A stretch of DNA of 64,000 bases, from IMG/VR virus record IMGVR_UViG_3300020473_000010, positions 186,001 through 250,000 of that record; one strand, written 5' to 3'. Positions 2,158 through 55,864 of the stretch are shown piece after piece. The notes below the pieces were generated by a model. It did no database searches. It had not been told where the DNA came from and saw nothing but the letters and a program-made list of their open reading frames with translations. The stretch's first letter is position 1. The number at the start of each line of letters is the position of its first letter. Made by a program: the position numbers and the translations under genes.

Positions 2158-2721
2158 TTATACAGCTGAATTACTGTTTTTTACAAAACCTGCTTTCGTA
2201 ACAACCCAAGCATCTGCCATATCTCGAGATTCCGGAATTATAATTGTTTTCCCTTTTCTTGGCCCTGATTGTAAAATTTTTGTGGGCCAATTATAATTTA
2301 AATGATTGTTGACCCAATCAAACACTTGTTCTTTGACATCTTTTCCGGCTTTCTTTTTCGAGATGGTTTTGATGCCGCATAATTTTCTAGCTTCGCTAAC
2401 AGAGATTAGTTCAGGCTTAACAGATATCTCATCGAAACAGATATATTGAACTATCCCATTGAACGAAGCTAAACGTGTTATGGTTCGCGCAGAGGACATG
2501 CCAGACGCATATCTCTGGAGTGGCTCTTCAATATAGACTTCGGAGATATTGTATTCATGTTTTTTGTCTTGCAGCCAAATTCTAAATTGAGACCCTTTCG
2601 AAACTAAATCTTTTGTTTTCGAAAGAGAGATATAGCCTAAATCCAGAAGATTTCCTTCTAAATCTAGAATACAAAAACCGGTTGCAGATGTTGAAACATC
2701 TAATCCTAATATAGTCGACAT
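2158..2721 (-). CDS. RuvC-like Holliday junction resolvase
   Basis: ILGLDVSTSATG, VYIEEPL and DMADA acidic motifs of the RuvC/RNase H fold. Confidence 0.85.
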   Translation of the reverse strand: MSTILGLDVSTSATGFCILDLEGNLLDLGYISLSKTKDLVSKGSQFRIWLQDKKHEYNISEVYIEEPLQRYASGMSSARTITRLASFNGIVQYICFDEISVKPELISVSEARKLCGIKTISKKKAGKDVKEQVFDWVNNHLNYNWPTKILQSGPRKGKTIIIPESRDMADAWVVTKAGFVKNSNSAV

Positions 2722-5700
2722 TAATAATCCATTTTTATTCTTAGCAAATAAGAATCGTTATTTCTCTTGAGGAGGGGTTGAGAAAATTTGGCTTTTCCGA
2801 CAACGTTTAAATTTTCATCATGTAAATATACTTCGGAAATATATATAAATTCTTCCTCTAGAGATTCATGGTCGGCCCCTGAAGCTTTGATTGTATCAAT
2901 ATGAGATGGGTTACTTGAAGAATTAAAAAGACCAGTTCGTAAAGGTACATTGATTTCTTGCACATACATGTTTTTGTGGGCTTTAAAATTTATATCTAAA
3001 TCAAAAAGACCAACATAATATATGTGTGGTGATTGTAGCAATATTGTTCCGTGCTCATAAAATACTTGACCAATTTTGTTCCATTTAGCAATTGATCCTG
3101 AAGAATTACTTCTATATAAATTTCCTATGCCATCATCTTTTATGTTTATATAAACATCCGGATTTTCGCTAATTTTGGCTTTTATTTCTATTGATTCTGG
3201 TGATATTTGATCTCCATAAAATATCGTTGGAATATCTATGATTGTTTGTAATGGAGAAATTTGATCAAAATCATCAATATATGTATTATAATCATCCGGA
3301 GAATCAGGGATCATTGTATCATTAATTGCAAGATCTAGTGCATTTCCTTCTTCATCTTTAAAGTCACTAAAATTTGCAAATTCATCGGCAAATTGAAACT
3401 TCGTTTGGCGGCCATCTGTTTTGTCACCGAGCCCTAATAGGCTAATCATGGATTTATTATTAAAATATTTTCCTTGAGAACTTGATATAATTTCATACGA
3501 AGGAACAAAATTCCCATTATCACATGGAAAGATTAGATTATTTCTTCTAGTTGTTGAAGGGTAATTTTTCCAGGAGCCAGTAAGATCCATAATCGAAGGG
3601 GAAGACCGGTCTTTCCCAGCAACCAAGTTGCTCCAGAGTACCAGGCCGTTTGTAGTTACCCATGGGTTTGGCGCGGTGAGCTGGTGAGCATTCCCGGGAA
3701 TATCTGCAGAAATTTTAAGCGAACGACCAGTGCCCATATCTTCGACAGTAAAACCCTCAAGTGATGTTAATAAAGTAGTTAATCTTGAAAATCTTGTTGA
3801 ATGATTCGTTTGAACGTCCGATGTGCCAATTGTTGCTGAGTATTGATTTGTGCCAGTTTCGGTGAAATACTCATCAACCGTTGCTGTGGCATGGTTGAAG
3901 ACTACCTTGTATGTAATCCAATTGGAATAATCCATCTTGAGTTGAAAGGTGAATTCCTTTGTTGTTGCAAAAATGGAGTCAGTATTGCTTAGTGCTATTT
4001 CTATTGAAGCTGTTTCTTCAATATCAGATGTATTTGCTCCTTGACTATAATGTGTAGGCACCAAATCTGCAAAGAATCCCATATTATACAAATAGGGATA
4101 CTCACTATTCGCATAATCTTTACAGAAAGCTTGAACATTTATATTTGGTATTGACCCCATAAAAGCATGATTATTATTAAACGGAGCATTCATAATATTA
4201 GAAACTAAACTAGAAGTAACAAAAGGGGGAAAATCTGTAGGCGAAAGTAAACCAGGAGCTGAAGTAGCATTAGTGTCATTTTCGTTAAATCCCAATGTAG
4301 AATCCGGAGACTGAAACAGTACTGGCAGAATAGTACTCGGATATGAAACTCCATCTGCTGCTCTGTCTTCACTATATTCTAATACGTGATAAAAACTTAC
4401 CGGTGAAGGTTGGTCATATATTACCGGAAGATAAAATAATAATCCATCTGAACCTGTTAGGCTGCATGTATGAAAAGTTTTAATTAGTGTAGATGTTCTA
4501 GGATAATCCCAAATGCGTAATTCAGAAATTTCACATTGAAGCCCAAATTTTAAATTACCCTGCCCTTCTATTGTAGCAAGCCCTGTAGTTTGTGAAGAAG
4601 AAGGTATAATTCCATCTCTTCTAATGGAATCTTTAGCTAGTTTACCAAAACTTAAAAGACTGCTACTGCTATTAGTATCCCAAGCGCCTATTTGGAGATG
4701 CCACCCCTCGCTGGTTCCAAATGTTGATGTCCAGGCCGGGTTGAGCTGAGAGTAATACACTAAGGATTTATTTGATGATAATATATCTTTTTGATTATTA
4801 ATTAAAATCTCTAAATTTTTTCCATTAAAATTAGGTCCCCATCTGATTGCAACATGTGACCAAGTATCAACGGCAACAGTTAAGCTACTAGACCATTGAA
4901 AACTGGATTGGTAGCTGTGTGGAATGGTGTGGTATTGTGAAGCAGGTCCATGATAATATTTTATAAAAAACTGTGTTGGTTTACCATTTAAGTCTAATGA
5001 ATTATTGTCAGGACTAATAGTAATTCCATAACGGTTTTTCAAATGTATGATAGCCGATTCGCTCGTTTGCCTCTTTGAAGGTTTAATCCAAAATTCAAAC
5101 GTAAATCCTTTGTTTATATCTGGAGAATATTGTCCTTTTGGTTTTGTTGTGGTAATCGAATCCGGATCTGTTCTGTTTACGTATACCAAAGCAGAGTGTC
5201 GGCTTCCGAAGCTATTATCTCCTTCTTGGATAAAGTTTAAGCAATTATAATTTGAATAATAATTTCCGCTTTTATAATTCCCGAGTTGTCTAGCCGGCTC
5301 AATTTGATTTCTTGCTATTTGTTGTAAAATATTGGACCCTGAGGAAAAAGTATCATGACCGGCCTTTAATACTCTTATATCTTTTTTTGTGTTATTCCTT
5401 GGATGCATTGGCAAATCGGAATAACCCATATGAGCTTTATGGAGATTTAATTGAGTAATTCCAGGTTTTGAAATTTCGGGTGGCCAATTCTCTTGTGATT
5501 CATATGGATTAGCGCCATCGAGAAGGAGGGCTAAAGCAGCTTCGTAGTTCCCATCGTGAAAACCCCCAGTATTTGATTTAGCATCAATCAATTTTATTTT
5601 GTATCCGGAATCTCCGCTTTCATAAACTGCAAATGAGCCTAATTGGGGATAGGTCGATAATATATTAACTGTAGCTAATGAATTAGTAGATTCAGGATCT

Positions 5701-6356
5701 TTAGATGGAGTTAAGCTGGTAAGTCGGATTATATGGTCCAGATAAATAGCTGGATTATTTGGATCCGTAAATTCTCTCCAGGTATGAGTCCCGGTTTTGG
5801 TGTTGTTGGTCCATGTTTCTGCATCTGAAGTGCCATCATCAGCTTTACCAGCAATTCCTTTATTGATTGCTGAAATAACAGCATCGGCTATTAACCCCGC
5901 GTTGGCGTGAACGCTGGTATTGATAACATGGTTATAATCAGAGACAGTAGGCGTCCCTGAAGAATGAAAAGCGATTATTTTCTTTTGGTATGATAAATCA
6001 CCATTTTTTACTGCTGCTTGGACTGTAATCGTTGCATTATCTGCTGGAACTCCTGAGAAAATAAACCCTGCTGAATATGAATTTGCATTATCAACAAACC
6101 CTTGGCCTGAACCGAATGCCGGCTCATCACCAGCAAAAATTTCAATTCTTCTTTGTTCAAAAGATTGAGCGCTATAAGGGGTAGTTTGAGACAAAAGCAA
6201 TCTTGAATCAACATTATCTTTTTGTAGTTCTGATCTATTGGGGAAGATATAAACAGACCCTGTTAATCCGGAGCTTGATGAAGCCCAGTGACGGGATGTA
6301 TTTAATTGGACCTTTGAATTAACAATCCTCCCTGAGGAAACTTTAAAGATCGACAT
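2721..6356 (-). CDS. Large virion structural protein (1211 aa) with a LamG/concanavalin-like domain, two inserted modules and a conserved C-terminal domain
   Basis: LamG-like FTFEFWIKP/WSHVAIRW/ISELRIWD motifs. The C-terminus FNSSSNPS...YISEVYLHDENLNVVGKAKFSQPLLK...RIKMDY is paralogous to that of the adjacent 520-aa ORF. Confidence 0.65.
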   Translation of the reverse strand: MSIFKVSSGRIVNSKVQLNTSRHWASSSSGLTGSVYIFPNRSELQKDNVDSRLLLSQTTPYSAQSFEQRRIEIFAGDEPAFGSGQGFVDNANSYSAGFIFSGVPADNATITVQAAVKNGDLSYQKKIIAFHSSGTPTVSDYNHVINTSVHANAGLIADAVISAINKGIAGKADDGTSDAETWTNNTKTGTHTWREFTDPNNPAIYLDHIIRLTSLTPSKDPESTNSLATVNILSTYPQLGSFAVYESGDSGYKIKLIDAKSNTGGFHDGNYEAALALLLDGANPYESQENWPPEISKPGITQLNLHKAHMGYSDLPMHPRNNTKKDIRVLKAGHDTFSSGSNILQQIARNQIEPARQLGNYKSGNYYSNYNCLNFIQEGDNSFGSRHSALVYVNRTDPDSITTTKPKGQYSPDINKGFTFEFWIKPSKRQTSESAIIHLKNRYGITISPDNNSLDLNGKPTQFFIKYYHGPASQYHTIPHSYQSSFQWSSSLTVAVDTWSHVAIRWGPNFNGKNLEILINNQKDILSSNKSLVYYSQLNPAWTSTFGTSEGWHLQIGAWDTNSSSSLLSFGKLAKDSIRRDGIIPSSSQTTGLATIEGQGNLKFGLQCEISELRIWDYPRTSTLIKTFHTCSLTGSDGLLFYLPVIYDQPSPVSFYHVLEYSEDRAADGVSYPSTILPVLFQSPDSTLGFNENDTNATSAPGLLSPTDFPPFVTSSLVSNIMNAPFNNNHAFMGSIPNINVQAFCKDYANSEYPYLYNMGFFADLVPTHYSQGANTSDIEETASIEIALSNTDSIFATTKEFTFQLKMDYSNWITYKVVFNHATATVDEYFTETGTNQYSATIGTSDVQTNHSTRFSRLTTLLTSLEGFTVEDMGTGRSLKISADIPGNAHQLTAPNPWVTTNGLVLWSNLVAGKDRSSPSIMDLTGSWKNYPSTTRRNNLIFPCDNGNFVPSYEIISSSQGKYFNNKSMISLLGLGDKTDGRQTKFQFADEFANFSDFKDEEGNALDLAINDTMIPDSPDDYNTYIDDFDQISPLQTIIDIPTIFYGDQISPESIEIKAKISENPDVYINIKDDGIGNLYRSNSSGSIAKWNKIGQVFYEHGTILLQSPHIYYVGLFDLDINFKAHKNMYVQEINVPLRTGLFNSSSNPSHIDTIKASGADHESLEEEFIYISEVYLHDENLNVVGKAKFSQPLLKRNNDSYLLRIKMDY

Positions 6357-6368
6357 AAGCGAGTCTCC

Positions 6369-7931
6369 TTAAAAGTCTAGGCGAACCCTTATTGTAAGAT
6401 CGGTCTCATCATTTTTTTCAATTGGCCTATTGAGTTTTGCAACAGCACATAAGTTTTCGCTGCTGTCGTATAATCCGATTGTTGTTATGAACGTAAAAGT
6501 TCTCTGAGTAGCGGAGGTTGGATCAGTGATTGTACTGAATTGTCCTGTACTTGGTATCGTAAATGTTGGATTATTGCTATAGTTAAATTGAGCAGCTGGA
6601 GCACGACAAAAATAAATATTACTAGATATTTCGGTTTGATTCTGCCAGGCCATTGCAGTTAATGAACTCGACCCTAATCTAACGGTAGAAATATGGTCAA
6701 TAATATTATCAATACTGGCACTAACCACAAAATCTGGAATAAATTTAGCATATGGGTTTGAAAATTGACTACTTGTTCCAGCAGTTCCTTTTGTAGAACC
6801 CATAATAGTCCTACCTTTTGAAACAACTTTTCCATGAGGGAGTGCATGTCTTTGGGGTGGGGTGTTTGCAACTGTTTCTGTCACATCGGTCATTGCATCA
6901 ATTTGCCCTAGCATATGCTGATCAGACCAAAAAGCTTTTCTCATGTCAATAACAGCCATTCCAGCATTATAAAAAATTAATCCTATTGTTTTTGTAGTAT
7001 CGGCTGCTCGAACTAACCTAGCAACTTCTCCACAGGATGCTAGTCTCGTATTAGTACTTGCTCCTAAGTCTGCAACAATGAACGGAGGATGGGTTGCCGC
7101 GGCGGAATGTCCAAGTAAACTTACATTAGAACCGGTAAGATTTGGTAACCATTGTGTCATTAACGCTCTACTTCCCAAGGTTGTAAGTGTTGTTGTTAGG
7201 GCTGTACTTGCTTTTCCGTCATAATAGGTTACATGAGAAGCGGCATCATATGCAGTTCCGTAAGAATCAACAGGGTTAGTTCCATCGAATCCGGAAAAAC
7301 TGGCCGTTGGATAAAGCCTCATTGCGAATGTTTCTTTCCTAATACCATCTCTAACAAACAGTCTGCGAAGATTAATAAACAGAGCTTCGTGAATAACACC
7401 GTAAGTTGAATTTGGTGGTGTGGAATTAACATCTGCAGCATAAGTTGCTGCTGGGATTCCATTATATGGCCAATTGGCATCTGACAACATGAAAGGTGCG
7501 TCTGGGTCACCTAAGCAATGAGCAGCCATCTGTCTGTAATTTGAAACTTTTTCTCTCATCATTAAAGTATTTTGAGCAAACCCTAATTTCCCTGTATTAG
7601 CATCACGGGTAAAACCGGGAGCTTGAGAAACAATGTTATCATAGCCAGAAGACGAATCTCCGAATAAACTGTTATAAAATAACCCAACAGTCATTTCACA
7701 TATAGGGTTTGCAGTCTGTAAAGTAAAATCTTGATCATAAATTGTTTGATACAGGGAAGAAGTTACTCCCGGACCGATTCCACCGGTAACAAATACCTGG
7801 TATTGTCTTCTGGATACAGACGATGAAATATCTTCTTGGACTACATCAATTAATTGATTTAAATGACTTTCCGCGGCTTTGTATTCAGTCCCAAGATCAA
7901 AAGGTTTTGTTGAAATTGTATAAAGGCTCAT
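6369..7931 (-). CDS. Putative virion structural protein (520 aa)
   Basis: C-terminus FNYSNNPTF...FITTIGLYDSSENLCAVAKLNRPIEK...RVRLDF is shared with 2721..6356; lies in the structural gene block. Confidence 0.6.
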   Translation of the reverse strand: MSLYTISTKPFDLGTEYKAAESHLNQLIDVVQEDISSSVSRRQYQVFVTGGIGPGVTSSLYQTIYDQDFTLQTANPICEMTVGLFYNSLFGDSSSGYDNIVSQAPGFTRDANTGKLGFAQNTLMMREKVSNYRQMAAHCLGDPDAPFMLSDANWPYNGIPAATYAADVNSTPPNSTYGVIHEALFINLRRLFVRDGIRKETFAMRLYPTASFSGFDGTNPVDSYGTAYDAASHVTYYDGKASTALTTTLTTLGSRALMTQWLPNLTGSNVSLLGHSAAATHPPFIVADLGASTNTRLASCGEVARLVRAADTTKTIGLIFYNAGMAVIDMRKAFWSDQHMLGQIDAMTDVTETVANTPPQRHALPHGKVVSKGRTIMGSTKGTAGTSSQFSNPYAKFIPDFVVSASIDNIIDHISTVRLGSSSLTAMAWQNQTEISSNIYFCRAPAAQFNYSNNPTFTIPSTGQFSTITDPTSATQRTFTFITTIGLYDSSENLCAVAKLNRPIEKNDETDLTIRVRLDF

Positions 7932-7949
7932 ATTTTAGTTCCGATTAAA

Positions 7950-8591
7950 TTATTGTGTATACTGTACAGTGATATATGTTGTCTTCTGTGGGCCGAACTG
8001 GCTGCGAACAGTAACAGGTACTGTAACTTGGTTATTTTGTAAATATTGCGTTTTTGAAGCCCCGTTGGCATTAATCTCAAATATCCAATCAGAAACCGGG
8101 CTAGAATTATTCCAGGTTGCTGTTGATTCAATTGATCCACCTACTAAGCTTAAAAAATCTGAATTATACTGTATAACCACATCTCCCGGTGATGCAATAG
8201 ATCCGTTCTGATATTTTTGCCGGTCTGTTGGAGATGTCGATAAAGTTATTGTCGTTTGATTTGTTGAGGCTTGATTAATTGTAGACTCAGTTACAGAAAT
8301 TGTAAACGGAATAAACCCAGTATGAGAGGTAGAAACGTTGTTGCCAGTATACAGCGAGTGTTTTGCTGAATAAACACTGTTTGTTGACGCTTCAAAAATT
8401 GGTGTATTTTTTTCAATTTTTTCTTTGCCAATTACTCTACCATATTTTTGAATCAGGGTATAATCTACTTCATCATCGAAAAAAGCGAAAGAAGCTATAT
8501 TTAAATTTCCTTCCGATATTAATTCACGTCCTTTATCTGTTAAAACAGCATCAACTACTATATTGTTAGTACTGTGATCTAAAAATCCCAT
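7950..8591 (-). CDS. Putative virion structural protein (213 aa)
   Basis: N-terminus MGFLD...DAVLTDKGRELI...IASFAFFDDEVDY is paralogous to 19484..20434. Strong SD (AAGGAG) and an ATATTTAT motif lie upstream. Confidence 0.6.
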   Translation of the reverse strand: MGFLDHSTNNIVVDAVLTDKGRELISEGNLNIASFAFFDDEVDYTLIQKYGRVIGKEKIEKNTPIFEASTNSVYSAKHSLYTGNNVSTSHTGFIPFTISVTESTINQASTNQTTITLSTSPTDRQKYQNGSIASPGDVVIQYNSDFLSLVGGSIESTATWNNSSPVSDWIFEINANGASKTQYLQNNQVTVPVTVRSQFGPQKTTYITVQYTQ

Positions 8592-8613
8592 TTTTTGTTC
8601 TCCTTAACTTAAA

Positions 8614-8621
8614 ATAAATAT
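8614..8621 (-). promoter_or_regulatory. Putative late promoter motif ATATTTAT
   Basis: The same 8-mer lies 18-22 nt upstream of the start codons at 8591, 26149 and 48312. Confidence 0.5.
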
Positions 8622-8692
8622 ATCCTTCTTGAATAAATAAATAAAATTTCTTTATCATCGCCTACGAAATTTAATCCTTTATTTTTTAATAA

Positions 8693-10543: not shown

Positions 10544-10580
10544 TTTTTATACTCCAAAAATAAAATATTGTACATTATAT

Positions 10581-13500: not shown

Positions 13501-16500
13501 GAATTAACTGCTGCACCATAAAAATAATGGGTTTGATTAGGAGCATACATGGCCTGTTTCGATTGGTTAGCCCATGGGGCAACTAAATTTTTCCACGGGG
13601 AGCCAGTAGTCATTATCTTGGTTCCAAATTGGGTATTCATATCAATAAATTGGGATAATTGTGGATTAACATTATCATATCTCATTCCAGTCTTATCGTT
13701 ATCTTGAAAATATAAATCCGGACCAGCTAAATAATCTAGGAAAAAAGTTGTATTTGATTCTTCTTCAAATTCGCCTACAGCTCTTTGTGATGCATATGAT
13801 ATTCCCTGTGTAACACCGAAGATGTTACTCTCTGATGGCATATAATACCCTCCAGGAGAAGGAATATGGCTTTTCCACTTATTGGTTGGTCTTGTAAAAT
13901 CTAACTCACTAGCAAAAAATAATAATTTACTATTAATACAAAGCCCAGTTGTAATAAAGGCGTTTAAATTTCCAGTTTGGCCATACTCACCATGATGTGA
14001 CGAGATACTCTGCTGCATCTGGTCAGTATAGTTTGAGTCAGCCCAGTAATCTCCAAAATGGGTGACTCCTAGATGGGCGCATAGTGATGCTTCAGGTCCA
14101 GAAAGTCTCGAAAGGTTTCTCATGTTTCCTTTAGAAGGGCTCAAATCAATGTCGACATAGCCCCATGAATTTGATTGTTCACTTTCGCTCATTTGGTAAA
14201 CATCGATGCTGTGATCAGAAGAAACTCCTATATAATAGGGGATATCGCCTTCGATCCAGTTGAAGCCCTGTCTGAATCTTTGGTTAAACCATTCGGTCCA
14301 AAGCTTGGAATTGTTATTGGGAAACACATATCGGTTGTAGGCCCAGTACCAACTATCATGCCCAATTCCGTCTTCTATCATTTGTGCGTACGAATATCCC
14401 AGAGTAGCCGGTGTCAGCCACTTTGACTTTGGGCTGTTCATGTGTTCATAACTCTGATAATAATAATCTAACCAACCATTCCCTAGTGGTGTGTTAATCG
14501 ACATTGGCGATATTGCTATATTATTGTCATAGTTCTCTGTTTCGGATGTTAAGTATTTGATATACTGAGCGATATTATGCAGACATGGATAATATCCTCC
14601 AGCTACTTGTAATTGCATCCACTGCCTAACATAATCTAGCTTTCCAGTTTCTGTTGCAGATGAAGAAATATGATCATCTCCAAAAATTCTATTATGTTGC
14701 CCTAAAAATTTAATAAGAAACATAAAATCAACAGCTTTCCATTCACTGGATTTGATTGGCTCGTAAGCACTTGAAATATTTTCGTTACCAGTATCTAAAC
14801 CGTTATCCCGGAATTCCTTATTGTATGCTCTAGAAGTTGGAATAAGCCCCGGGGCGGAGGCCTGGTAGCTTGATTGATGCCTTATTTCTTGACGGTGTTG
14901 AAAGATCCTTCGGTCATTGGTCCATGCGTCCTCGTTAACACCAAAACCATCTTCATCAAAATCACTTAGAATGGTGGGATCTTCACCAACCATCCAATAG
15001 TATGAATCTTCCACCCAATTACCAAAATCGCCGGACCACATTTCTAAAATGTTGGATTGGTAGGTCATACTTTCGGCTTTGGTCGGCATGGTTGTGTCTT
15101 GAATATAACCTGTGTATTGTGAGGTACCTTTTACCGTATCGATGCAGGAATTTAAATTAGATTTATATGTATTAAGCCCTACGTTTGCTATATACATATC
15201 GTTTTCAACCAAATTAACAAAGGTCTTCAATGCGTCGTTTAATACCGAAACTGAATTTGCTTCTAGAATTTTTGCATTAGCCCTGTTTACATTCAGAGAA
15301 ACAACTTCATCCCATAATGATAAAAAATCATCTAATGGGGCAAAGTCCGCATCGTTCCCTTCTAAGATCATGCCAACATTTTTAGCAAAAAATTGAGTAA
15401 ATCCAGTTACTGTAGCCCCTGCTGTTTTTGACCCAAGAGTATTTACATAAAGCCCACCTGTTTTGTATCTTAATATATCCCCTATTTTTGACTCAACAAA
15501 ATTATCTAAGCTTGCTCCTGTTGCTAAGTCGCCTAAATCCTCCGTAATATTTGAAGTATCGCTTCTCTGTAAGGACAGCACTATAGTTGTCCATAATTTT
15601 TGACCAAGAGCGGCTGTAGAAATCTCTTCATCTCGTGAATTTATGGTTGGCATACCCTGAATATAGTCTTGCTGAACCGTGTGATGTGCAACCCAATTGG
15701 TAAGATTGGTCCATGCGGCTTGCGAATTGAATCTAGCAGGATCTATCGATGAAAGTGCCGGATATGAGGGAAGCCAACTACCAGCAGAGGATGAATCAAG
15801 CGTTCCTAATTCAAAGCTCGAGTTGGTAGGTTGAGAAACCGGTAACATCCCTACCCCTAGATCAATCAAGGCTTGGAGTGTTATAATTGCCGGATCTGTA
15901 ATATTGTACGGATTTGGAGCAGCAATAGCGCTGATAAAAGCATCCTTTTTTTCTAAAAGCTTTTCTGAATAATCTATAAAATCATTGATTAATTCTGTGT
16001 ACTCTTGAATTGTTTTTGAATATTTTTTTATTGTTTTTGCAGGAAAATTAGATATTTTTTCTATAGAACTATATAATTTGTTTAGTTTTATGGTCATGTT
16101 TATATCTAAAAGATCTTGGTCATATAACAGTTTTGATCGAGATATCATAACACAGCGGTTACCTGGTATACCGTTCTCTAAAAGCACTTCATCTGTAAAG
16201 TCGTTAACTGAAACTGGACGAAGAGCTGATGATGTTTTTATGTTTGATATAATTCCGGAAAAATCAATCTGATCAGGCTTGACGCCAGATGGGATTGAGC
16301 CTTCCGGGACAGCCCCTGTTCCAAAAACGGCGTCTTCAGCCAATATATCCCTTTTAAAAATGATGGAAGCTGTTTCGTTATTAAATTCAACCATAGCTTC
16401 ATGGCTCATGTGAACTTTAAAATAAAGAAGCGGTTCTTCCCAATGCCATTGAGGCACATCGAAATTTAAATCTAAATCTAAGTCAATTAATAATTGGTTA

Positions 16501-16610
16501 TATTCCGATGGAGAACTTAATAAATTTCTGACCAATATTTCAAATTGAGATGTATTGGTAATCAATTTAGAATTTGACGGGATATCATATGTTAAATTAA
16601 CTATTGCCAT
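10581..16610 (-). CDS. Very large hypothetical protein (2009 aa), probably virion-associated
   Basis: 6-kb uninterrupted ORF within the structural block, with a Trp/Tyr/Cys-rich central region. No family motif recognised. Confidence 0.55.
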   Translation of the reverse strand: MAIVNLTYDIPSNSKLITNTSQFEILVRNLLSSPSEYNQLLIDLDLDLNFDVPQWHWEEPLLYFKVHMSHEAMVEFNNETASIIFKRDILAEDAVFGTGAVPEGSIPSGVKPDQIDFSGIISNIKTSSALRPVSVNDFTDEVLLENGIPGNRCVMISRSKLLYDQDLLDINMTIKLNKLYSSIEKISNFPAKTIKKYSKTIQEYTELINDFIDYSEKLLEKKDAFISAIAAPNPYNITDPAIITLQALIDLGVGMLPVSQPTNSSFELGTLDSSSAGSWLPSYPALSSIDPARFNSQAAWTNLTNWVAHHTVQQDYIQGMPTINSRDEEISTAALGQKLWTTIVLSLQRSDTSNITEDLGDLATGASLDNFVESKIGDILRYKTGGLYVNTLGSKTAGATVTGFTQFFAKNVGMILEGNDADFAPLDDFLSLWDEVVSLNVNRANAKILEANSVSVLNDALKTFVNLVENDMYIANVGLNTYKSNLNSCIDTVKGTSQYTGYIQDTTMPTKAESMTYQSNILEMWSGDFGNWVEDSYYWMVGEDPTILSDFDEDGFGVNEDAWTNDRRIFQHRQEIRHQSSYQASAPGLIPTSRAYNKEFRDNGLDTGNENISSAYEPIKSSEWKAVDFMFLIKFLGQHNRIFGDDHISSSATETGKLDYVRQWMQLQVAGGYYPCLHNIAQYIKYLTSETENYDNNIAISPMSINTPLGNGWLDYYYQSYEHMNSPKSKWLTPATLGYSYAQMIEDGIGHDSWYWAYNRYVFPNNNSKLWTEWFNQRFRQGFNWIEGDIPYYIGVSSDHSIDVYQMSESEQSNSWGYVDIDLSPSKGNMRNLSRLSGPEASLCAHLGVTHFGDYWADSNYTDQMQQSISSHHGEYGQTGNLNAFITTGLCINSKLLFFASELDFTRPTNKWKSHIPSPGGYYMPSESNIFGVTQGISYASQRAVGEFEEESNTTFFLDYLAGPDLYFQDNDKTGMRYDNVNPQLSQFIDMNTQFGTKIMTTGSPWKNLVAPWANQSKQAMYAPNQTHYFYGAAVNSSRLSADTIFTSNDKYQRAYTETDFDYPHQLAFFYSPYHLAYLSCEVYNKEEDCNQYLWQGRNAAWKLGGPASNQNDPLYIVYDYDNYEKLPSYADAGESYDEYQNFWNYSNLNSDDRHACGFNEWNIQTNFAPARIYYTTVSLLRKLAQEFTLNVVKTFKDVSSKYGILTENCDNIADFEALLGDQRYAWYGEVLSYLCRIAKEEFNSQGDYSAFEINLSGNGSFSLDRTKPRVTPNDFNKSTNCLGQHSWRSINQYANYNTWVEIHKRECSALWAPVHQRCGLYFSNGESLPEYCQTSLTPWCFKRISRTWMNVNKSVEKSDSFLLYEVSDSSAGFDIQDYFSDVFNKSGELLSKYKGAENAQSTSYFNYGLSQASYLLSVGDIDFAQEAQEINSYRRIISFHPDVQFSTAEPKLIGSSYCSNFMSGQVSNGLQLRSYLENIRTQFEKFKVDVPVIGALAQSLNKIFEIKGLDAVQHASYLDRHQITLTKKALMNEVGVYPSYIPSKYFKITSSDWSLILRTWADKLVNPKDVALGQGRTGSPWKIVTLGIPTKMIGQANPYVITYGDITDEITAPQPINLIKSPRIYNTRLFIMPDDLPDQLWNPLIANELTEKTDTLFSDQTTAGSYAWDQAISSSNAVLEKLLIPKIKFTLIDDNEIKKLSYDGSIDGTDSLIELVRNDIDTGLFAQIPSGNAPGGSGLGYLDEAFIGWLDGTADDCTPEELAKFIAYNHIQDFLCKAYHEYYGGLTLEEETFLVDDEIQNHVYSPEAVENDDSTFPWVKGDFNERKPIIEVDSDYSLSSMIIPDTAIGKVASPKVFDRVFHFLEGTHNWVFYFFPNLNGATGVSTTYKAIDIYEHFKDSEDWEIYIVSESSSSFRYQDFDSDNSEVFTTKFIPWDTGYKLWVGYPTIRIGNPFGSSQHPGLEDTSIPISRSHSRSAILMLKPKYDGNLIGVITYNILTAGGQSSTPA

Positions 16611-16637
16611 TTTAGTTTCCTGTTTTTAATATCGAAA

Positions 16638-19484
16638 TTACCATGAAACCGATTGGTTGTCATCTTCTTCGCTCTCTTCATCGTCATCATCATTCTCATT
16701 ATTTGTGCTAGAATTATTATCGTCATTATCGTCATTGTCTTCGTCGTTATCACTGTATTGATCCGTTGAAGCCCCAACTAGATTTGCTGTTTCTGCTAAT
16801 TTACTAGTAAGTTGTTGATACCATTGTGAATTATTTAAAGCATCTACCATATCCTGATATTCTTCAGCTTCTTTTTGAGCTATTTCTTCATCGGACATCC
16901 AGCCCTCCGGAGTAGTATTTGGCATTGAATCTACATCATAAACCAACTCAGTAGGAATACCTACATGGAATTCTTTTGCTGCTATTACATAGTTTGTTGG
17001 CATATACCAATTGTCGACACTGGGATTACCTTCTGATTCTTTCCAACCAAAGATTTTTATTACATATTCTATTCTTGTGTCTGGCCAATATTCCGGGAGA
17101 CCATAAGAATTTGTGACATCTTCTTGGGATTCAAGCAAGTGTAAATAATGGTGCCAACGAAAGATGGTTGGTGAAAGCCAGTCTGCAATATATATGTCCT
17201 TTTCTGTAATTGCAAATTTTCCTATTAAAATTTCATTAGCTGGGATTTGCTGACCAAGTGAATGATGAAAACCACCGGAAGAAGAATTGTTAGGAGGGCA
17301 TCTCACAGTTACAATCCCATATGATCCTGTTTGTTTTAAATAATCTGAAAGATGGATATTCATTGTTACATACTTCATTAGAAACAATTTGTCGATTGTA
17401 ACTAACTCATATTCTCTTCTTTTAAATCCATCATCGTGTATTGCAACTCGAGGATTTACTGCGTCTCTCCCTGAACTTTTTCTTTGTTTTGGTTTCCATT
17501 TAATATCTAATCTACCATCAGTAATCCCGGAAACCATATAGAAATCTTTTACATTTTCAGTGACAATAATTTCGTCATCGTATGTTAAAGCTGGCGTATC
17601 TTCAAATTCTCTTATTAGATCAAAAGTATCTGAGCTCATAGCATAACGGTTTATATTCTGGAGGGCTGATTGTTGGTCTATTAAATCGGGTGCTTCCTCT
17701 CCGGCCATTACAGCTGGGTGATGTTCATACCATGGATATCTAATTCTTTTTACTTTACGGGGTATTAAACCTAGATGATCTACATGGAGTGGTAGAAAAT
17801 TAGGGTTTTCAACCCATGCTCCGTCGACGCCATACCGGTAACCAAATTCGGCCGCAAGTGAAACTTTTGAAAGCCGAAAATTAATTCTGCTCATTCCTGA
17901 GCCTCTAGTTGATACTCTTCGGTATTTTGTTCCTGCTAAAGTGTTTGTTGAAGAATTCCATGTTCCTTTTGCGCCATCAGGACCAAATTGTTCATATCCA
18001 CCGGTCAATTCTAGAAGTTGATATCCTCCAGAGGTATCAAGATATCCATTCAATAAAATTCTTTGATTGCTAATTAAAATTTCATCATGAAATTCTTTTA
18101 CATGCAAAAAATATAGTAACGTTGAATTATTAGCCCAAGTTGATTTTGTATCTTCCCAAAAGGGATATCCTTCTTCGTTTATTGCTGTTAAATCTAGCTG
18201 ATGAGGGCTTTTGGACGCAATAAAAAAATCATCTAGATTATTAAAGTCAATAGTAATAAATTGATCATCATCATTAACTATATTCATTTTTTGCATTAAA
18301 GGAGGGCCATAAATTCTTCTATCTAAGTGAGTTGTTTGAGAAAATGACTGTCTTTCATGTTCTTTACCAAACTTTAATTGGGTATTAATAAAATTTAATT
18401 GGTACCAACTGTAATCTGTCTGTATTGTTTCTTGATAATACTTTTGCCCTGGTATTGTTGATATTTTTTTAATTACTTGAAGGCCATTGGGTTCACAAAT
18501 TTCAATTTTATCTGGGATTGTATCTGTATCAAAATAAATATAAAAATTATGATATCCAGGAATCTGTGTAGATTTTGAATCTTTATACAGTTGCATATTG
18601 CTGTTAAACTCTGTCTCTACTCTCCAGTTATACGAATAAGGACTATCTTTATAGATAAACTGTTTTTGATGATCAAAATATCCGATTTCTTTATTGTGTT
18701 TATGGTTCGATAGAATATAAACTTGACCGCCCATGGGTTCAGTCCGGGCTGGAGAATATCTGTCGTTGAGAGAAACTGTAAATCTATTTCCGATATCATC
18801 TATGTTATAATAATTTCTGCAATACAAATTTGGTATTACGTCTGGTGAGTCATCAACATAATTTATGTGATGAAATGGATTTTCTACACTTACTGATAAT
18901 AATATATTTTGATCATCTCCATCCTTTGAATTCATATATGGAATATCTTTAAAATAATCTTCATCAAAAATATATAATTCTAAAAAATCATCGGTTTCAG
19001 CTACTCCACCAATACCTGTAGTGCCATCAACAATATTAAATGGGCCTAGGCCTTGCTCATCAATCCAAGTTTCGTACCACGGAGAAGGAATCCAGTATGT
19101 TTCGAAATTATATTGAGCTCTATTAAAATAATACTTGTCTAATTCAGATAATTCATCATAATGCTGATAAGACTGAGGTAATTGGTCATCAACGAATTCG
19201 GATGGCTGTTGCAATCCAGGGGCACTATTCCACGGTACCCTTTCTAGCAACCCGATATTTGAAGCATCGAAAACCTCTAATAAACCCATGGATTGTTCCG
19301 CGGAAAAGCTTAGGGCCTGAATCTCTCCGTTGTTTCTTACGGAATTTAAAAAATCCCTAGCATTGGATCCATCAACCGCATGGGGTTCTTCTATTACAAT
19401 TGTAGTATCTTTTTTTCCCGTTATTGCCAGAGACTTATTGTTTGGCAATTTTAATATTACTGATTTTCCAGCTGGAGTTGGCAT
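16638..19484 (-). CDS. Hypothetical protein (948 aa) with an acidic low-complexity C-terminal tail
   Basis: Long ORF, TAATG-coupled to the upstream gene; ends DNDEDNDDNDDNNSSTNNENDDDDEESEEDDNQSVSW. Confidence 0.55.
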   Translation of the reverse strand: MPTPAGKSVILKLPNNKSLAITGKKDTTIVIEEPHAVDGSNARDFLNSVRNNGEIQALSFSAEQSMGLLEVFDASNIGLLERVPWNSAPGLQQPSEFVDDQLPQSYQHYDELSELDKYYFNRAQYNFETYWIPSPWYETWIDEQGLGPFNIVDGTTGIGGVAETDDFLELYIFDEDYFKDIPYMNSKDGDDQNILLSVSVENPFHHINYVDDSPDVIPNLYCRNYYNIDDIGNRFTVSLNDRYSPARTEPMGGQVYILSNHKHNKEIGYFDHQKQFIYKDSPYSYNWRVETEFNSNMQLYKDSKSTQIPGYHNFYIYFDTDTIPDKIEICEPNGLQVIKKISTIPGQKYYQETIQTDYSWYQLNFINTQLKFGKEHERQSFSQTTHLDRRIYGPPLMQKMNIVNDDDQFITIDFNNLDDFFIASKSPHQLDLTAINEEGYPFWEDTKSTWANNSTLLYFLHVKEFHDEILISNQRILLNGYLDTSGGYQLLELTGGYEQFGPDGAKGTWNSSTNTLAGTKYRRVSTRGSGMSRINFRLSKVSLAAEFGYRYGVDGAWVENPNFLPLHVDHLGLIPRKVKRIRYPWYEHHPAVMAGEEAPDLIDQQSALQNINRYAMSSDTFDLIREFEDTPALTYDDEIIVTENVKDFYMVSGITDGRLDIKWKPKQRKSSGRDAVNPRVAIHDDGFKRREYELVTIDKLFLMKYVTMNIHLSDYLKQTGSYGIVTVRCPPNNSSSGGFHHSLGQQIPANEILIGKFAITEKDIYIADWLSPTIFRWHHYLHLLESQEDVTNSYGLPEYWPDTRIEYVIKIFGWKESEGNPSVDNWYMPTNYVIAAKEFHVGIPTELVYDVDSMPNTTPEGWMSDEEIAQKEAEEYQDMVDALNNSQWYQQLTSKLAETANLVGASTDQYSDNDEDNDDNDDNNSSTNNENDDDDEESEEDDNQSVSW

Positions 19485-20434
19485 TATTGTTCCTTCCTTT
19501 TGAAAACTATAGAAAATAATCTTAAAAATTTTGGTATATCACTCGAATCTCGAAGGATATGACCAGCATAAAAAACTCTTGCAAGAGGGTTCCCAGTAGA
19601 GTCAAAAAAATCTCCGGCATCGACGATTACAAGTTTTCGGATTTTTGATGACTCTATTTCGAAAACTTGACCTAATAGATTTACCGTTAACGAACTTTTG
19701 TTAATTGTTATATTTTGATGTTGGGCTTCTGATATTAATTCGGCTTCAAGTTCTTCAAAAGTTTGAGGAGGTTTAGATATATATTTAGCGTATACACCAA
19801 TTGAGTTTCCTAATTGATCGACTGGGGGCAAATAAGACATTGCTCTAGTATTTCGAAACCGTGAATCAATAATAACTGGATTAAGAATATTTTCATTTGT
19901 GATCGTACTTTCATCTGTATATACTCTATTAAATTCTATAGCTTTAGGCCATACTTTCATTTCTGAATTGTTGAAAAATTCATCTTTTGTTTTAACAATT
20001 TTTAGATTTTTAAAATTATTAATAGATGTATCTAATGATGAAAAAGTTCCGGAATAAATATCTTGAGACCCAGTAGCAATAGCAAAAGTTTCATTGGGAA
20101 GAGCATTCATAATCGTGCCTTCCCTAATTAAGATTTTAGGTTCAATTACTACCCCAGATTCATCTGTTGCAAATACAGAACTTCTGGCAAACATCCCAAT
20201 TTGGCCAAATTCTTCAATTTCCGGAATGATTGTATCTTGAGGGCCACCAAAAGCTTCTAGTTGAATTTCATTAGAAATATCTAAAAGTTGGACTCCATCT
20301 GTTTGATAATACGCTGTTTTGTCCGTAATGCTAGCATATTTTATCTCGAACGTTCTGTTTCGAATTTGTCTTCTACCATTTGGGGTAAGAATAACATCTA
20401 AAATACGCTGCTTTGGATCTAATATACCTGCCAT
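19484..20434 (-). CDS. Putative virion structural protein (316 aa)
   Basis: N-terminus MAGILD...DVILTPNGRRQI...IKYASITD is paralogous to 7950..8591. AAGGAG SD and an ATAATTAA motif lie upstream. Confidence 0.6.
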   Translation of the reverse strand: MAGILDPKQRILDVILTPNGRRQIRNRTFEIKYASITDKTAYYQTDGVQLLDISNEIQLEAFGGPQDTIIPEIEEFGQIGMFARSSVFATDESGVVIEPKILIREGTIMNALPNETFAIATGSQDIYSGTFSSLDTSINNFKNLKIVKTKDEFFNNSEMKVWPKAIEFNRVYTDESTITNENILNPVIIDSRFRNTRAMSYLPPVDQLGNSIGVYAKYISKPPQTFEELEAELISEAQHQNITINKSSLTVNLLGQVFEIESSKIRKLVIVDAGDFFDSTGNPLARVFYAGHILRDSSDIPKFLRLFSIVFKRKEQ

Positions 20435-47787: not shown

Positions 47788-47796
47788 TTTTAAAAA

Positions 47797-51186: not shown

Positions 51187-51472
51187 CTATTTGGTTCTCC
51201 TCGTTTTCTATTTTTGCAATTTCGTTTGCGACTCTGAGAATTGAATCTCTTGAATCCTTAATGTCATTTATAACTTGCCTAATTTGTGGAGAATCATAAA
51301 ATATTGGGATTTCTAAAATTTTTGATACACTAGAATAGCGATCATCTAGAATATCTAAACTTGTTTCTAATGAATCTGTAATTTTTAATATTATATTTGC
51401 AAATTTATAATTATAATATAACGAAACTATTAACGCTATAGAAATTATCGCTAATAACCAATTTATTATCAT
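51173..51472 (-). CDS. Small membrane-anchored hypothetical protein (99 aa)
   Basis: N-terminal hydrophobic helix followed by a coiled-coil-like region. Confidence 0.6.
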   Translation of the reverse strand: MIINWLLAIISIALIVSLYYNYKFANIILKITDSLETSLDILDDRYSSVSKILEIPIFYDSPQIRQVINDIKDSRDSILRVANEIAKIENEENQIDERP

Positions 51473-54720: not shown

Positions 54721-54766
54721 TTTTTGTATACCTCTCTAAATAAAGATACTCCTAAGTTTAAAGAAG

Positions 54767-55789: not shown

Positions 55790-55833
55790 ATTTTATTTGT
55801 AGTGAAAGGTTTGTTGAAGTTTTGCCAATTCTA

Positions 55834-55862: not shown

Positions 55863-55864
55863 GA

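What the first reader, a model, noticed from the sequence alone, without database searches (positions are those of the whole stretch)
2721..20434. Apparent split tail-fibre attachment domain: two N-half genes and two C-half genes
Seen: two ORFs (7950..8591 and 19484..20434) begin with D..LT..GR..I......I.......D. Two others (6369..7931 and 2721..6356) end with I..(I/V).L.D...N....AK...P..K......IR...D(F/Y). From memory these resemble the N-terminal (IT.AG..KL...IT.MAVGD) and C-terminal (RE.GLYD..G.LIAVA...K) halves of the P2 gpH N-terminal/DUF3751 baseplate-attachment domain. Inference: the domain may be completed in trans by strand complementation between separate polypeptides, letting large cargo proteins be docked combinatorially on the baseplate.
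Basis: inference. Interest (0 to 1): 0.6.

Follow-up and report, generated by a model that had tools for sequence, protein, structure and literature searches.

The report
Two-piece tail-fibre anchor in phage baseplate
In this 289-kb T4-like marine phage, the domain that anchors a tail fibre to the baseplate in phage P2 appears to be encoded in two pieces on separate, adjacent proteins that are predicted to dock onto each other; the split is conserved in every related phage examined but has never been tested at the bench.

Summary
In the whole 288,697-bp genome, exactly two ORFs start with the N-motif: P1 (7950-8591) and P2 (19484-20434). Exactly two end with the C-motif: P3 (6369-7931) and P4 (2721-6356).

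- **Similarity within each pair:** hhalign gives E 1e-7 for the two N-motifs and 1.5e-12 for the two C-motifs.
- **Link to P2 gpH:** standard Pfam HMM searches find nothing. Profile-profile comparison maps the N-motif onto positions 5-38 of PF12571, the N-terminal fibre domain of P2 gpH. It maps the C-motif onto positions 80-131. The scores are 36.9 and 42.8, against a maximum of 20 in 100 column shuffles.
- **No cis partner:** P3 and P4 hold no N-like segment, and P1 and P2 hold no C-like segment.
- **Predicted docking:** a complex prediction of P1 with P3 scored ipSAE 0.64 against 0.01 for the best control. P1 strand 34-39 pairs antiparallel with P3 strand 482-488.
- **Conservation:** in 80 diverse viral contigs and 3 cultured phages, an N-gene is followed directly by one to five C-genes and is never fused to them.

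The split-domain reading is therefore partly supported. Still open are the P2/P4 pairing, combinatorial docking, and whether P3's domain is already complete on its own. I file it as a new variant of a known kind: phage fibre adaptors that are completed in trans.

The parts
7950..8591 (-). P1, 213 aa: small 'N-half' protein. Residues 1-~95 (nt 8307-8591) form the conserved N-domain (MGFLDHSTNNI..DAVLTDxGR..L....F.I..FA..DDEVDY..KYGR.VGKEKIEKNTP.FEA). Residues ~100-213 are variable.
   Evidence: Translation. Family alignment A1 has 21 invariant columns, all within residues 1-67. hhalign to gpH 5-38. Interface residues 10-97 in the predicted complex.
7932..7949 (-). 18-nt spacer between P1 and P3. 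It follows the TAA stop of P1 and holds a second in-frame TAA, so this is a true gene boundary.
   Evidence: Sequence read. The median spacer is 14 nt in 67 related loci.
6369..7931 (-). P3, 520 aa: 'C-half' protein. Residues ~395-520 (nt 6372-6749) form the conserved C-terminal domain, which ends FITTIGLYDSSENLCAVAKLNRPIEKNDETDLTIRVRLDF. The N-terminal ~90 aa are also conserved, and the middle carries variable insertions.
   Evidence: alignments A2 and A4. More than 3,300 homologues, all 418-562 aa among the 120 listed. AF2 model with pLDDT 78.8. hhalign to gpH 80-131. Interface residues 438-520 plus 6-17.
2721..6356 (-). P4, 1211 aa: second 'C-half' protein. Residues ~1080-1211 (nt 2724-3119) are a diverged C-half ending ...YISEVYLHDENLNVVGKAKFSQPLLKRNNDSYLLRIKMDY. 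A Laminin_G_3 / ConA-like lectin domain lies at residues 415-520 (nt 4797-5114).
   Evidence: PF13385, E 2.7e-6; homology to the P3 C-terminus; HMM hit at 1080-1211, E 4e-36; weak match to gpH 87-114 in the same register, P 0.006.
19484..20434 (-). P2, 316 aa: second 'N-half' protein, a diverged paralogue. The N-motif lies in residues ~3-44 (nt 20303-20428). A well-modelled beta-rich C-terminal part spans residues 160-316.
   Evidence: In the AF2 model, residues 1-87 are mostly below pLDDT 50 while 160-316 are confident. Full-length homologues occur only in the clade whose second C-half is of the diverged 'HD(D/E)NLNV' type.
45958..48312 (-). Context genes: a gp25-like protein (47797-48312) and a gp6-like baseplate wedge protein (45958-47787). 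They mark the start of the baseplate module that runs down to P4.
   Evidence: PF04965 (E 4.9e-6), and phrog_43, phrog_219 and phrog_10646.

Best explanation
P1 and P3, and probably P4, form a two-chain version of the fibre-to-baseplate adaptor domain that phage P2 carries as one piece at the N-terminus of its tail fibre gpH (Pfam PF12571).

- **The two pieces.** The first ~40 residues of that domain (strand, helix, strand ending in a G-D-D/G turn) sit at the N-terminus of the small conserved protein P1. The remainder, a hairpin 'ITTxGLYD..xLxAVAK' plus a final strand, sits at the extreme C-terminus of large variable proteins. One of these, P4, carries a lectin-like domain.
[quoted passage not shown] This makes one composite domain, which then serves as the module by which these peripheral proteins are held on the baseplate.
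- **Stoichiometry.** One adaptor gene serves one to five cargo paralogues, depending on the phage.
- **P2.** It is a lineage-specific second N-half protein whose partner is unknown; P4 is the obvious candidate.

Shown here: the motifs, their homology within the genome, their collinear profile similarity to PF12571, the conserved gene order, and the absence of fused forms in the sample. Predicted only: the P1-P3 interface. Inferred: that the composite is the baseplate anchor, that P1 also serves P4, and the location in the virion.
For: 1. **Collinear similarity to PF12571.** The N-profile (P1 family plus immuto, Mel-JY01 and RM378 members) aligns to gpH 5-38 with probability 82.6% and P 9.7e-6. 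The C-profile aligns to gpH 80-131 with probability 90.3% and P 1.5e-6. The tool's own hhalign runs on the full-length family alignments pick the same segments. Against 100 column-shuffled PF12571 alignments the scores are 36.9 and 42.8, versus null means of 11 and maxima of 19-20. The reversed template gives 10-11.
2. **No half in cis.** The N-profile against full-length P3 and P4, and the C-profile against full-length P1 and P2, all give probability below 1%.
3. **Complex prediction of P3 + P1.** ipSAE was 0.64 (runs 0.67, 0.61, 0.64) and the best of 3 controls 0.01. That mark was reached by 58 of 80 solved complexes and 2 of 110 mismatched pairs; these counts hold only roughly, because my own alignments were used. 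The runs share at least 79% of their contacts, and the partner's pLDDT is at least 74. The interface is P1 10-97 with P3 438-520, and the lowest-error pairs are 487:35, 486:36, 485:37 and 484:38, which is antiparallel strand pairing between exactly the two motifs. No PDB entry matches P1, P3 or PF12571 by sequence, so recall of a solved complex is unlikely.
4. **Conservation.** In 80 IMG/VR loci, the N-domain starts at residue 6 or earlier in 79 of 80 proteins, which are 203-270 aa long. In 67 of 71 evaluable loci the next gene within 120 nt is a C-half protein, and 59 have a second one. In 117 of 131 C-half proteins the domain ends within 5 aa of the C-terminus. None of the 80 loci has both halves in one ORF. 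Cultured phages show the same layout: immuto has N, C, C; Mel-JY01 has N followed by five C; RM378 has N, C, N. The N-half and C-half occur in the same phage records.
5. **P2's N-half is unplaced in its own monomer model.** Residues 1-87 are mostly below pLDDT 50, as expected for a segment that needs a partner.
[quoted passage not shown] In immuto they sit directly before the annotated tail fibre and tail spike genes.
Against: - **No HMMER-level match.** PF12571 finds nothing in the four proteins, in their isolated ends, or in the six-frame genome at E<=10. The link rests on hhalign probabilities of 61-90% over only 28-48 columns.
- **No structural link.** Foldseek against PDB and BFVD, and VIA-align, give no match to P2-type fibres.
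- **P3 may be complete alone.** The AF2 monomer of P3 models its C-terminal domain confidently without P1 (block pLDDT 82-91 over residues 401-450 and 481-520, 63-67 over 451-480), and most fold-search alignments span residues 3 to 520. P3's own N-terminal strands may therefore pack there.
- **Sizes do not add up neatly.** The P1 N-domain (~95 aa) plus the P3 C-domain (~125 aa) is larger than PF12571 (150 aa), so this is not a simple cut.
- **Limited prediction evidence.** Only one pair was folded, by one method, with unpaired alignments of my own.
- **Weak support for P2 and P4.** Their halves match PF12571 only weakly (P 0.007 and 0.006).
- **No experimental data.** There are none for any family member, and no proof that these proteins are in the virion.
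Confidence: 0.5

Rival explanations
1. The C-half proteins carry a complete anchor domain of their own, built from their conserved N-terminal strands plus the C-terminal ~125 aa. It would have a gp8 / whisker / BW3TFN-like 'incomplete sandwich' fold. P1 would then be a separate adaptor that adds a strand, like the 'rope' of phage GP4 or the BW3 linkers of A511 and phage 812. On this reading the system is an ordinary member of the known beads-on-a-string adaptor class, not a fissioned PF12571 domain.
For: - AF2 models P3's C-terminal domain confidently without P1 (block pLDDT 82-91 over residues 401-450 and 481-520, 63-67 over 451-480), and fold-search alignments span residues 3 to 520.
- The weak structural hits keep falling in this fold class. 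They include phage 812 baseplate chain 9euf_b (Z 4.4, rmsd 2.5, 70 aligned), GP4 fiber I 8jou_a (Z 3.3), Bas63 whisker 9mt4 (Z 2.6) and Sf14 neck 9c39_K (Z 2.3).
- The literature describes exactly this trans completion (PMC10811340, PMC13433997, PMC12609058). A P2 preprint models the gpH adaptor on 8JOU with the gpI tail as the rope (10.64898/2026.09.14.750843).
Against: - All these Z scores lie below the tool's stated noise level; the typical best Z for unmatched models is 7-8.
- PF25691 and PF09215 find nothing in the genome.
- hhalign against a 15-sequence gp8 family gives probability below 1%.
- The P1 N-domain is a ~95-aa folded domain with about 280 predicted contacts, not an extended rope.
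- Its sequence matches the N-part of PF12571 itself.
Confidence: 0.27
2. P1 and the C-half proteins do not bind each other. On this reading the shared hairpin motif (hydrophobic strand, G-x-x-D turn, strand) is a common building block. The gene adjacency only reflects membership of one baseplate module, and the predicted complex is a false positive.
For: - Complex predictors pass some non-binders; 2 of 110 mismatched pairs reached the mark.
- The tool description reports that 7 of 44 blind-picked neighbour pairs pass.
- The N- and C-motifs weakly resemble each other (FALGDDEVDY...KYGR against VGLYD..LLAVAKLSRP), but without significance (probability 0.1-0.3%).
Against: - The score of 0.64 stands against 0.00-0.01 in three controls, including P1 against an unrelated 485-aa protein. 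The three runs agree on at least 79% of their contacts.
- The interface uses the most conserved segments of both families.
- Co-occurrence and immediate adjacency hold in 67 of 71 evaluable loci across deep divergence, down to ~35% identity.
Confidence: 0.12
3. P2 is not a free N-half. It is a self-contained single-chain relative whose own C-terminal three-strand meander receives its N-terminus, in cis or by domain swap in a homo-oligomer. Only P1 would then act in trans, and there is no 2 x 2 combinatorial system. This concerns P2 only and is compatible with the main explanation for P1 and P3.
For: - P2's last three strands (269-277, 283-295, 301-312) have the same strand and loop lengths as P3's (480-488, 494-506, 512-519).
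- P2 lies 11 kb away from P4, not adjacent to it.
- At 316 aa, P2 has room for both halves.
Against: - There is no profile similarity between the P2 C-terminus and the C-half. The global hhalign score is 7.4, against a shuffle maximum of 8.3, and 6 of 100 shuffles reach it.
- AF2 did not dock the N-terminus on the C-terminal sheet.
- P2 occurs only in the clade whose second C-half is of the diverged type: 5 of 5 contigs, against 0 of 5 contigs plus 0 of 3 complete phages. That pattern fits a P2-P4 pair, although it may reflect a single evolutionary event.
Confidence: 0.3
4. Artefact: P1 and P3 are one gene interrupted by a sequencing error, a recoded stop codon or a programmed read-through.
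For: P1 and P3 are in the same reading frame, only 18 nt apart.
Against: - There are two in-frame TAA codons in the spacer, and P3 has its own ATG.
- More than 100 independent contigs from different samples keep two ORFs with varying spacers of 3-98 nt.
- ORFs of up to 2,009 aa read cleanly under table 11, so there is no sign of another genetic code.
Confidence: 0.01

Closest known systems
Pfam PF12571 (Phage_tail_fib): N-terminal adaptor domain of the phage P2 tail fibre gpH and related prophage or tailocin fibres
   Same: - The sequence motifs occur in the same order. 'LT..G...LA......I..(M/F)A(V/L)GD(G/D)' matches P1 13-40, and '(F)xI(R/T)ExGL(Y)D..G.L.AV......(K)P' matches P3 474-520.
- The genes lie at the distal end of a contractile-tail baseplate module.
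- The presumed role is the same: holding peripheral fibre or spike proteins on the baseplate.
   Different: - Here the two parts lie on different polypeptides.
- The C-part sits at the extreme C-terminus of the cargo protein rather than at the N-terminus of a fibre.
- Both parts carry extra conserved sequence (~95 + ~125 aa against 150 aa).
- There is no HMMER-level match.
- No fibre-repeat shaft follows the domain.
BW3TFN connectors and 'rope' assemblies: T4 gp8, A511 gp105, phage 812 arm-segment protein gp118, Bas63 whisker with collar rope, GP4 Fiber-1 with separate rope protein
   Same: - The principle is the same: a small beta domain is left incomplete and is completed in trans by a strand from another polypeptide, and the result tethers receptor-binding proteins (PMC10811340, PMC13433997, PMC12609058).
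- The predicted P1-P3 contact is also an intermolecular sheet.
- Weak fold hits of the P3 model fall in this class.
- A P2 preprint models the gpH adaptor domain itself on GP4 8JOU (10.64898/2026.09.14.750843).
   Different: - In those systems the donated element is an extended linker or tail of the wedge, collar or rope protein running through homodimers. Here the donor is a folded ~95-aa domain of a dedicated small protein, and the acceptor is the C-terminus of large heterogeneous proteins.
- There is no sequence or profile similarity to gp8 or PF25691.
- The structural Z scores (4.4 or lower) are below the noise level.
Donor-strand complementation in chaperone-usher pili (a functional analogy, cited from general knowledge and not tested here)
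   Same: An incomplete beta fold on one subunit is completed by a strand from a different polypeptide, which gives modular, ordered assembly.
   Different: It is an unrelated fold in a bacterial secretion context. It involves serial polymerisation rather than a fixed adaptor-cargo pair.

Membership tests
PF12571 Phage_tail_fib (P2 gpH N-terminal domain) | Match to the Pfam HMM above the gathering score (23 bits) | tested here: not met
   hmmscan of the full proteins at E<=1 and of the isolated ends at E<=10 found no match. Neither did a six-frame search of the whole genome at E<=10. As a positive control, P2 gpH scores 196.9 bits.
PF12571 Phage_tail_fib (P2 gpH N-terminal domain) | Remote homology of the N-terminal strand-helix-strand (gpH ~5-40) | tested here: met
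   hhalign maps P1-family residues 13-40 onto gpH 5-38 with probability 61-83% and P 1e-5 to 8e-5. The score is 36.9 against a shuffle maximum of 19.1 in 100 shuffles. The P2 family aligns in the same register but weakly (P 0.007).
PF12571 Phage_tail_fib (P2 gpH N-terminal domain) | Remote homology of the 'RExGLYD..G.LIAV...KP' hairpin and final strand (gpH ~80-131) | tested here: met
   hhalign maps P3-family residues 474-520 onto gpH 80-131 with probability 70-90% and P 1.5e-6 to 4e-5. The score is 42.8 against a shuffle maximum of 19.8. P4 aligns in the same register but weakly (P 0.006).
PF12571 Phage_tail_fib (P2 gpH N-terminal domain) | One contiguous ~150-aa domain at the N-terminus of a single fibre polypeptide | tested here: not met
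   The halves are on different proteins, and the C-part is C-terminal. Neither half is detectable in cis. None of 80 loci carries both halves in one ORF.
PF12571 Phage_tail_fib (P2 gpH N-terminal domain) | The same three-dimensional fold | not testable with these tools
   No PDB entry matches PF12571 by sequence or profile.
BW3TFN / T4 gp8 connectors (PF25691, PF09215) | HMM or profile similarity | tested here: not met
   PF25691 and PF09215 give no hit in the genome at E<=10. hhalign of the N, C, P2 and P3 profiles against a 15-sequence gp8 family gives probability below 1%, and the same holds against single T4 baseplate proteins.
BW3TFN / T4 gp8 connectors (PF25691, PF09215) | gp8-like fold (N-terminal helix, small sheet, incomplete sandwich) | tested here: inconclusive
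   The best hits of the P3 model are 9euf_b (Z 4.4), 8jou_a (Z 3.3), 9mt4 (Z 2.6) and 9c39_K (Z 2.3). All lie below the tool's noise level of about Z 7-8.
BW3TFN / T4 gp8 connectors (PF25691, PF09215) | Sheet completed in trans by another polypeptide | tested here: inconclusive
   This is predicted only: ipSAE 0.64 against 0.01 for the best control, with antiparallel pairing of P1 34-39 and P3 482-488.

The most novel reading that the evidence does not exclude
A dedicated two-component docking system in Far-T4-type and related myoviruses. In it, one small universal adaptor, P1, supplies the missing N-terminal strand-helix-strand of a P2-gpH-type anchor domain to the C-terminus of any of one to five interchangeable cargo proteins (lectin-bearing and others). 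Host-range modules would thus be anchored by their C-termini and could be swapped without touching the baseplate. It would also be a natural protein fission or fusion pair linking P2-type fibres to T4-type peripheral baseplate proteins. In the jumbo clade, a second co-diverged adaptor-cargo pair (P2 with P4) would give orthogonal docking.
Probability: 0.3. Interest if true: 0.7.

Novelty: new variant of a known kind. Interest (0 to 1): 0.55.

Why it matters
- **How common the family is.** One search returned more than 3,300 P3 homologues at E<=0.001 among the 8,000 candidates scored. A capped IMG/VR scan returned at least 565 N-half stretches. The module occurs in marine, freshwater, flavobacterial, cyanobacterial and thermophilic myoviruses, and every member is annotated 'hypothetical'.
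- **What it would explain.** If the two-chain anchor is real, it shows how these phages, which lack recognisable T4 host-interaction genes, hang their receptor-binding proteins on the baseplate. It would also give a rule for finding those proteins: anything that ends in the C-half.
- **Wider use.** It would be a natural example of a fibre adaptor domain divided between two genes, which is useful for thinking about modular host-range exchange and about the evolution of P2-type and T4-type tails.
- **Testability.** Three cultured phages carry the module (immuto, Mel-JY01, RM378), so the idea can be tested directly.

Tried and rejected
**Sequence searches that found nothing**
- Pfam and PHROG scans of P1-P4 found only Laminin_G_3 in P4 and one weak PHROG of unknown function.
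- PDB searches with P1, P3 and the profiles A1, A2 and A6 gave nothing useful; the only hit was a chance DnaK match at E 0.34.
- Megablast of the region against phage records gave no match.

**My own gp8 idea: rejected**
- From memory, T4 gp8 looked like the fused single-chain counterpart, with similar-looking termini.
- hhalign against single T4 proteins and against a gp8 family gives probability below 1%.
- PF09215 and PF25691 are absent from the genome.

**A cis N-half inside P3: not supported**
- I suspected that 'FIPDFVVSASIDNIIDHIS' or 'YQVFVTGG' in P3 might act as an N-half in cis. Profiles do not support either.

**A C-half-like end in P2: not supported**
- The profile comparison shows nothing, although the secondary-structure pattern is alike.

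**Read-through or recoding between P1 and P3: rejected**.

**Fold searches**
- Fold searches of the P2 model found nothing: Foldseek best E 0.14, VIA-align best Z 3.1.
- Foldseek of the P3 model against PDB found nothing at E<=0.001.
- BFVD returned only uncharacterised members of the same family.
- The ESM Atlas returned only unnamed viral clusters, plus one Laminin_G_3 cluster that shares the C-terminal domain.

- The scan for gpH relatives in viral contigs returned 80 near-identical copies and was useless for a profile.
- The genome-contig scan served only to obtain a genome handle. The diverse PF12571 set came from the phylum-wide family search launched from that handle.
- One Pfam call failed on a frame slip and was corrected.

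**Not run**
- The search of protein representatives was not run. It is costly, its 150-row output would be filled by canonical orthologues, and the 80-locus sample already addressed fused forms.
- Read laying and the look-up of sequencing runs were not used, as they are not relevant here.
- No other genetic code was invoked.

Full report
**Setting**

The window is bases 186,001-250,000 of a 288,697-bp IMG/VR virus record that CheckV rates 96% complete. All large genes lie on the minus strand.

A gp25-like protein (PF04965) and a gp6-like wedge protein (phrog_219, phrog_10646) at 45.9-48.3 kb open a long baseplate module of very large ORFs. The module ends with the four genes of the finding. 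Downstream of them lie an unassigned 187-aa ORF (no Pfam match; RuvC-like only by eye), a DnaG-type primase and a Metallophos (gp47/SbcD-like) gene. In relatives, terminase and a T4-type portal follow.

This is a distant T4-like jumbo myovirus. The only cultured phages that share the module are Rhodothermus phage RM378, Flavobacterium phage immuto and Microcystis phage Mel-JY01. RM378 is the reference 'Far-T4' phage (PMC4360716).

**Observation**

- **Homology of the two N-ends:** hhalign probability 94%, E 9.6e-8.
- **Homology of the two C-ends:** probability 97.7%, E 1.5e-12, over 89 columns.
- **Uniqueness:** HMMs of both motifs find nothing else among all 978 ORFs of the genome.
- **P1 and P3 are two genes.** They share a reading frame, but two TAA codons separate them. 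The two-gene layout recurs in every relative.

**Are the motifs halves of the P2 gpH domain?**

Ordinary HMM searches say no. Pfam finds nothing in the proteins or their isolated ends, and PF12571 has no six-frame hit in the genome at E<=10.

I therefore collected 20 diverse PF12571 domains from bacterial genomes and compared profiles.

| Query | Aligns to gpH | Probability | P |
|---|---|---|---|
| P1-type N-domain | 5-38 | 61-83% | 1e-5 to 8e-5 |
| C-half | 80-131 | 70-90% | 1.5e-6 to 4e-5 |
| P2 N-end | same register as P1 | weak | 0.007 |
| P4 C-end | same register as P3 | weak | 0.006 |

Against 100 column-shuffled templates the two main scores (36.9 and 42.8) exceed the null maxima (19.1 and 19.8) by a wide margin. 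The reversed template scores 10-11.

The missing half is not detectable in cis. The N-profile against full-length P3 and P4, and the C-profile against full-length P1 and P2, all give probability below 1%.

The two parts of a domain that is contiguous in P2-type fibres are on separate proteins here.

**Do the halves meet?**

- **Score:** ipSAE 0.64 (runs 0.67, 0.61, 0.64), with the best of three controls at 0.01.
- **Calibration:** 58 of 80 solved complexes and 2 of 110 mismatched pairs reached that mark. These counts hold only roughly, because my own alignments were used.
- **Consistency:** the runs agree in at least 79% of their contacts, and the partner's pLDDT is at least 74.
- **Interface:** P1 10-97 against P3 438-520, plus P3 6-17.
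- **Tightest pairs:** 487:35, 486:36, 485:37 and 484:38. This is antiparallel pairing of the P1 strand 'SFAFFD' with the P3 strand 'ITTIGL'. By the hhalign mapping these are the 'TMAVGD' and 'RELGLY' strands of gpH.

Nothing in the PDB resembles either protein or PF12571 by sequence, so recall of a solved complex is unlikely. This supports binding but does not show it.

**Monomer models**

- **P2** (AF2, mean pLDDT 64.7): the first 87 residues, which include the N-motif, are mostly below pLDDT 50. Residues 160-316 are confident. This fits an N-terminal arm that needs a partner.
- **P3** (AF2, mean pLDDT 78.8, pTM 0.77): the C-terminal domain is modelled confidently without P1, and fold-search alignments span residues 3 to 520. 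P3's own conserved N-terminal strands probably pack against it.
- **Consequence:** 'P3 is complete alone and P1 is an added subunit' cannot be excluded.
- **Structural neighbours are weak.** All have Z of 4.4 or lower, below the tool's noise level. They nevertheless recur in one class: phage 812 baseplate 9euf_b, GP4 fiber I 8jou_a, Bas63 whisker 9mt4 and Sf14 neck 9c39_K.

**Conservation and gene arithmetic**

- P3 has more than 3,300 homologues at E<=0.001 among the 8,000 candidates scored. The 120 listed are 418-562 aa and cover 96-99% of the query, with one exception at 63%, so none carries a P1-like extension.
- A scan of IMG/VR with the P1 alignment returned at least 565 stretches, of which 80 loci were analysed.
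  - All 80 N-domains sit at the start of 203-270-aa proteins.
  - In 67 of 71 evaluable loci the next gene is a C-half protein (median spacer 14 nt), and 59 have a second one.
  - In 117 of 131 C-half proteins the domain ends within 5 residues of the C-terminus.
  - No ORF has both halves.
- Cultured phages show the same layout.
  - immuto has N, C, C, followed directly by annotated fibre and spike genes.
  - Mel-JY01 has one N followed by five C-half paralogues of 352-954 aa.
  - RM378 has N, C, N.
- The ESM Atlas shows the C-terminal domain on viral proteins of 383-896 aa, including Laminin_G_3 proteins.

The variable N:C ratios fit one conserved adaptor serving several cargo proteins.

Two clades emerge from the 80 loci.

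- **Jumbo clade (includes the window).** The second C-half is of the diverged 'HD(D/E)NLNV' type, and a full-length P2 homologue is present in 5 of 5 contigs tested.
- **immuto/Mel-type clade.** Both C-halves are canonical, and P2 is absent from 5 of 5 contigs and from 3 of 3 complete phages.

This fits a co-diverged P2-P4 pair, but it may rest on a single evolutionary event.

**Relation to what is known**

Completion of small beta domains in trans is an established theme in phage peripheral structures.

- **gp8-like connectors.** T4 gp8, A511 gp105 and the phage 812 arm-segment dimers are threaded by linkers of the wedge or arm-scaffold protein, which makes continuous sheets (PMC10811340, PMC13433997).
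- **Whiskers and ropes.** Bas63 whiskers are 'incomplete sandwiches' completed by a collar 'rope'. In GP4 the rope is a separate protein (PMC12609058).
- **P2 itself.** A recent preprint models the gpH adaptor domain on GP4 8JOU, with the gpI C-terminal tail as the rope. It remarks that in P2 the element is a domain of gpH rather than an extra protein (10.64898/2026.09.14.750843).

Three features differ from those systems. A folded ~95-aa domain of a dedicated small protein is the donor. The acceptor sits at the C-terminus of heterogeneous large proteins. The two pieces together resemble one PF12571 domain.

My own idea that T4 gp8 is the fused counterpart found no support.

**Verdict**

I put about 0.5 on the two-chain PF12571-like anchor as stated. 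I put about 0.27 on the nearby alternative, a complete C-terminal anchor plus an adaptor subunit of the known rope or connector kind. Little weight goes on 'no interaction', and essentially none on artefact. I file it as a new variant of a known kind, of moderate interest. It can be tested directly in three cultured phages.

No reads tool was used. No sequence resembling human DNA was met. No alternative genetic code was named.

Noticed in passing
window 21060-23513 (-) and 23620-25764 (-): These are tandem paralogues of 817 and 714 aa. They are 40% identical over the first ~390 aa (E 5e-71) and 28% over the last ~220 aa, with a variable middle. Neither has a Pfam or PHROG match. They look like a duplicated fibre or spike pair with conserved ends.
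   Followed up: partly
window 51469-58709 (-): A sugar-nucleotide and glycosylation cluster lies just upstream of the baseplate genes. It holds two GT4 glycosyltransferases, GDP-mannose 4,6-dehydratase (E 6e-128), a DegT-type aminotransferase (E 1.5e-72) and an NAD-dependent epimerase, with a PD-(D/E)XK nuclease in between. Further small ORFs up to 64 kb were not scanned.
   Followed up: partly
window 16638-19484 (-): This 948-aa protein ends in a ~45-residue tail made almost only of D, E, N and S (…DNDEDNDDNDDNNSSTNNENDDDDEESEEDDNQSVSW). It has no family match.
   Followed up: no
window 1-1218 (-); L003 15256-18387, L005 16998-20129: The Metallophos (gp47/SbcD-like) ORF runs off the window. 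In relatives it forms a single 1043-aa ORF that also carries SMC_N, an apparent fusion of gp47-like and gp46-like parts.
   Followed up: no
L028 (Microcystis phage Mel-JY01) 10148-19094: Five consecutive genes (357, 352, 954, 718 and 591 aa) all end in the C-half domain. They follow a single 211-aa N-half gene. This is the largest expansion of the family seen here.
   Followed up: partly
window 19484-20434 (-) against 6369-7931 (-): In the AF2 models, the last three strands of P2 (269-277, 283-295, 301-312) have the same strand and loop lengths as the C-half of P3 (480-488, 494-506, 512-519). There is no profile similarity between them. P2 might be a cryptic single-chain relative.
   Followed up: partly
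window 26244-27323 (-): This 359-aa protein has a weak match to phrog_677, 'baseplate wedge tail fiber protein connector' (E 3.6e-5). It is the only other recognisable peripheral baseplate component in the module.
   Followed up: no
L025 (T4) 16152-17153: The C-terminus of T4 gp8 (residues 269-334) weakly matches the end of Pfam PF25691 (BW3TFN), at E 3.4e-4 and below the gathering score. This agrees with the literature that groups gp8 with the A511-type connectors.
   Followed up: no
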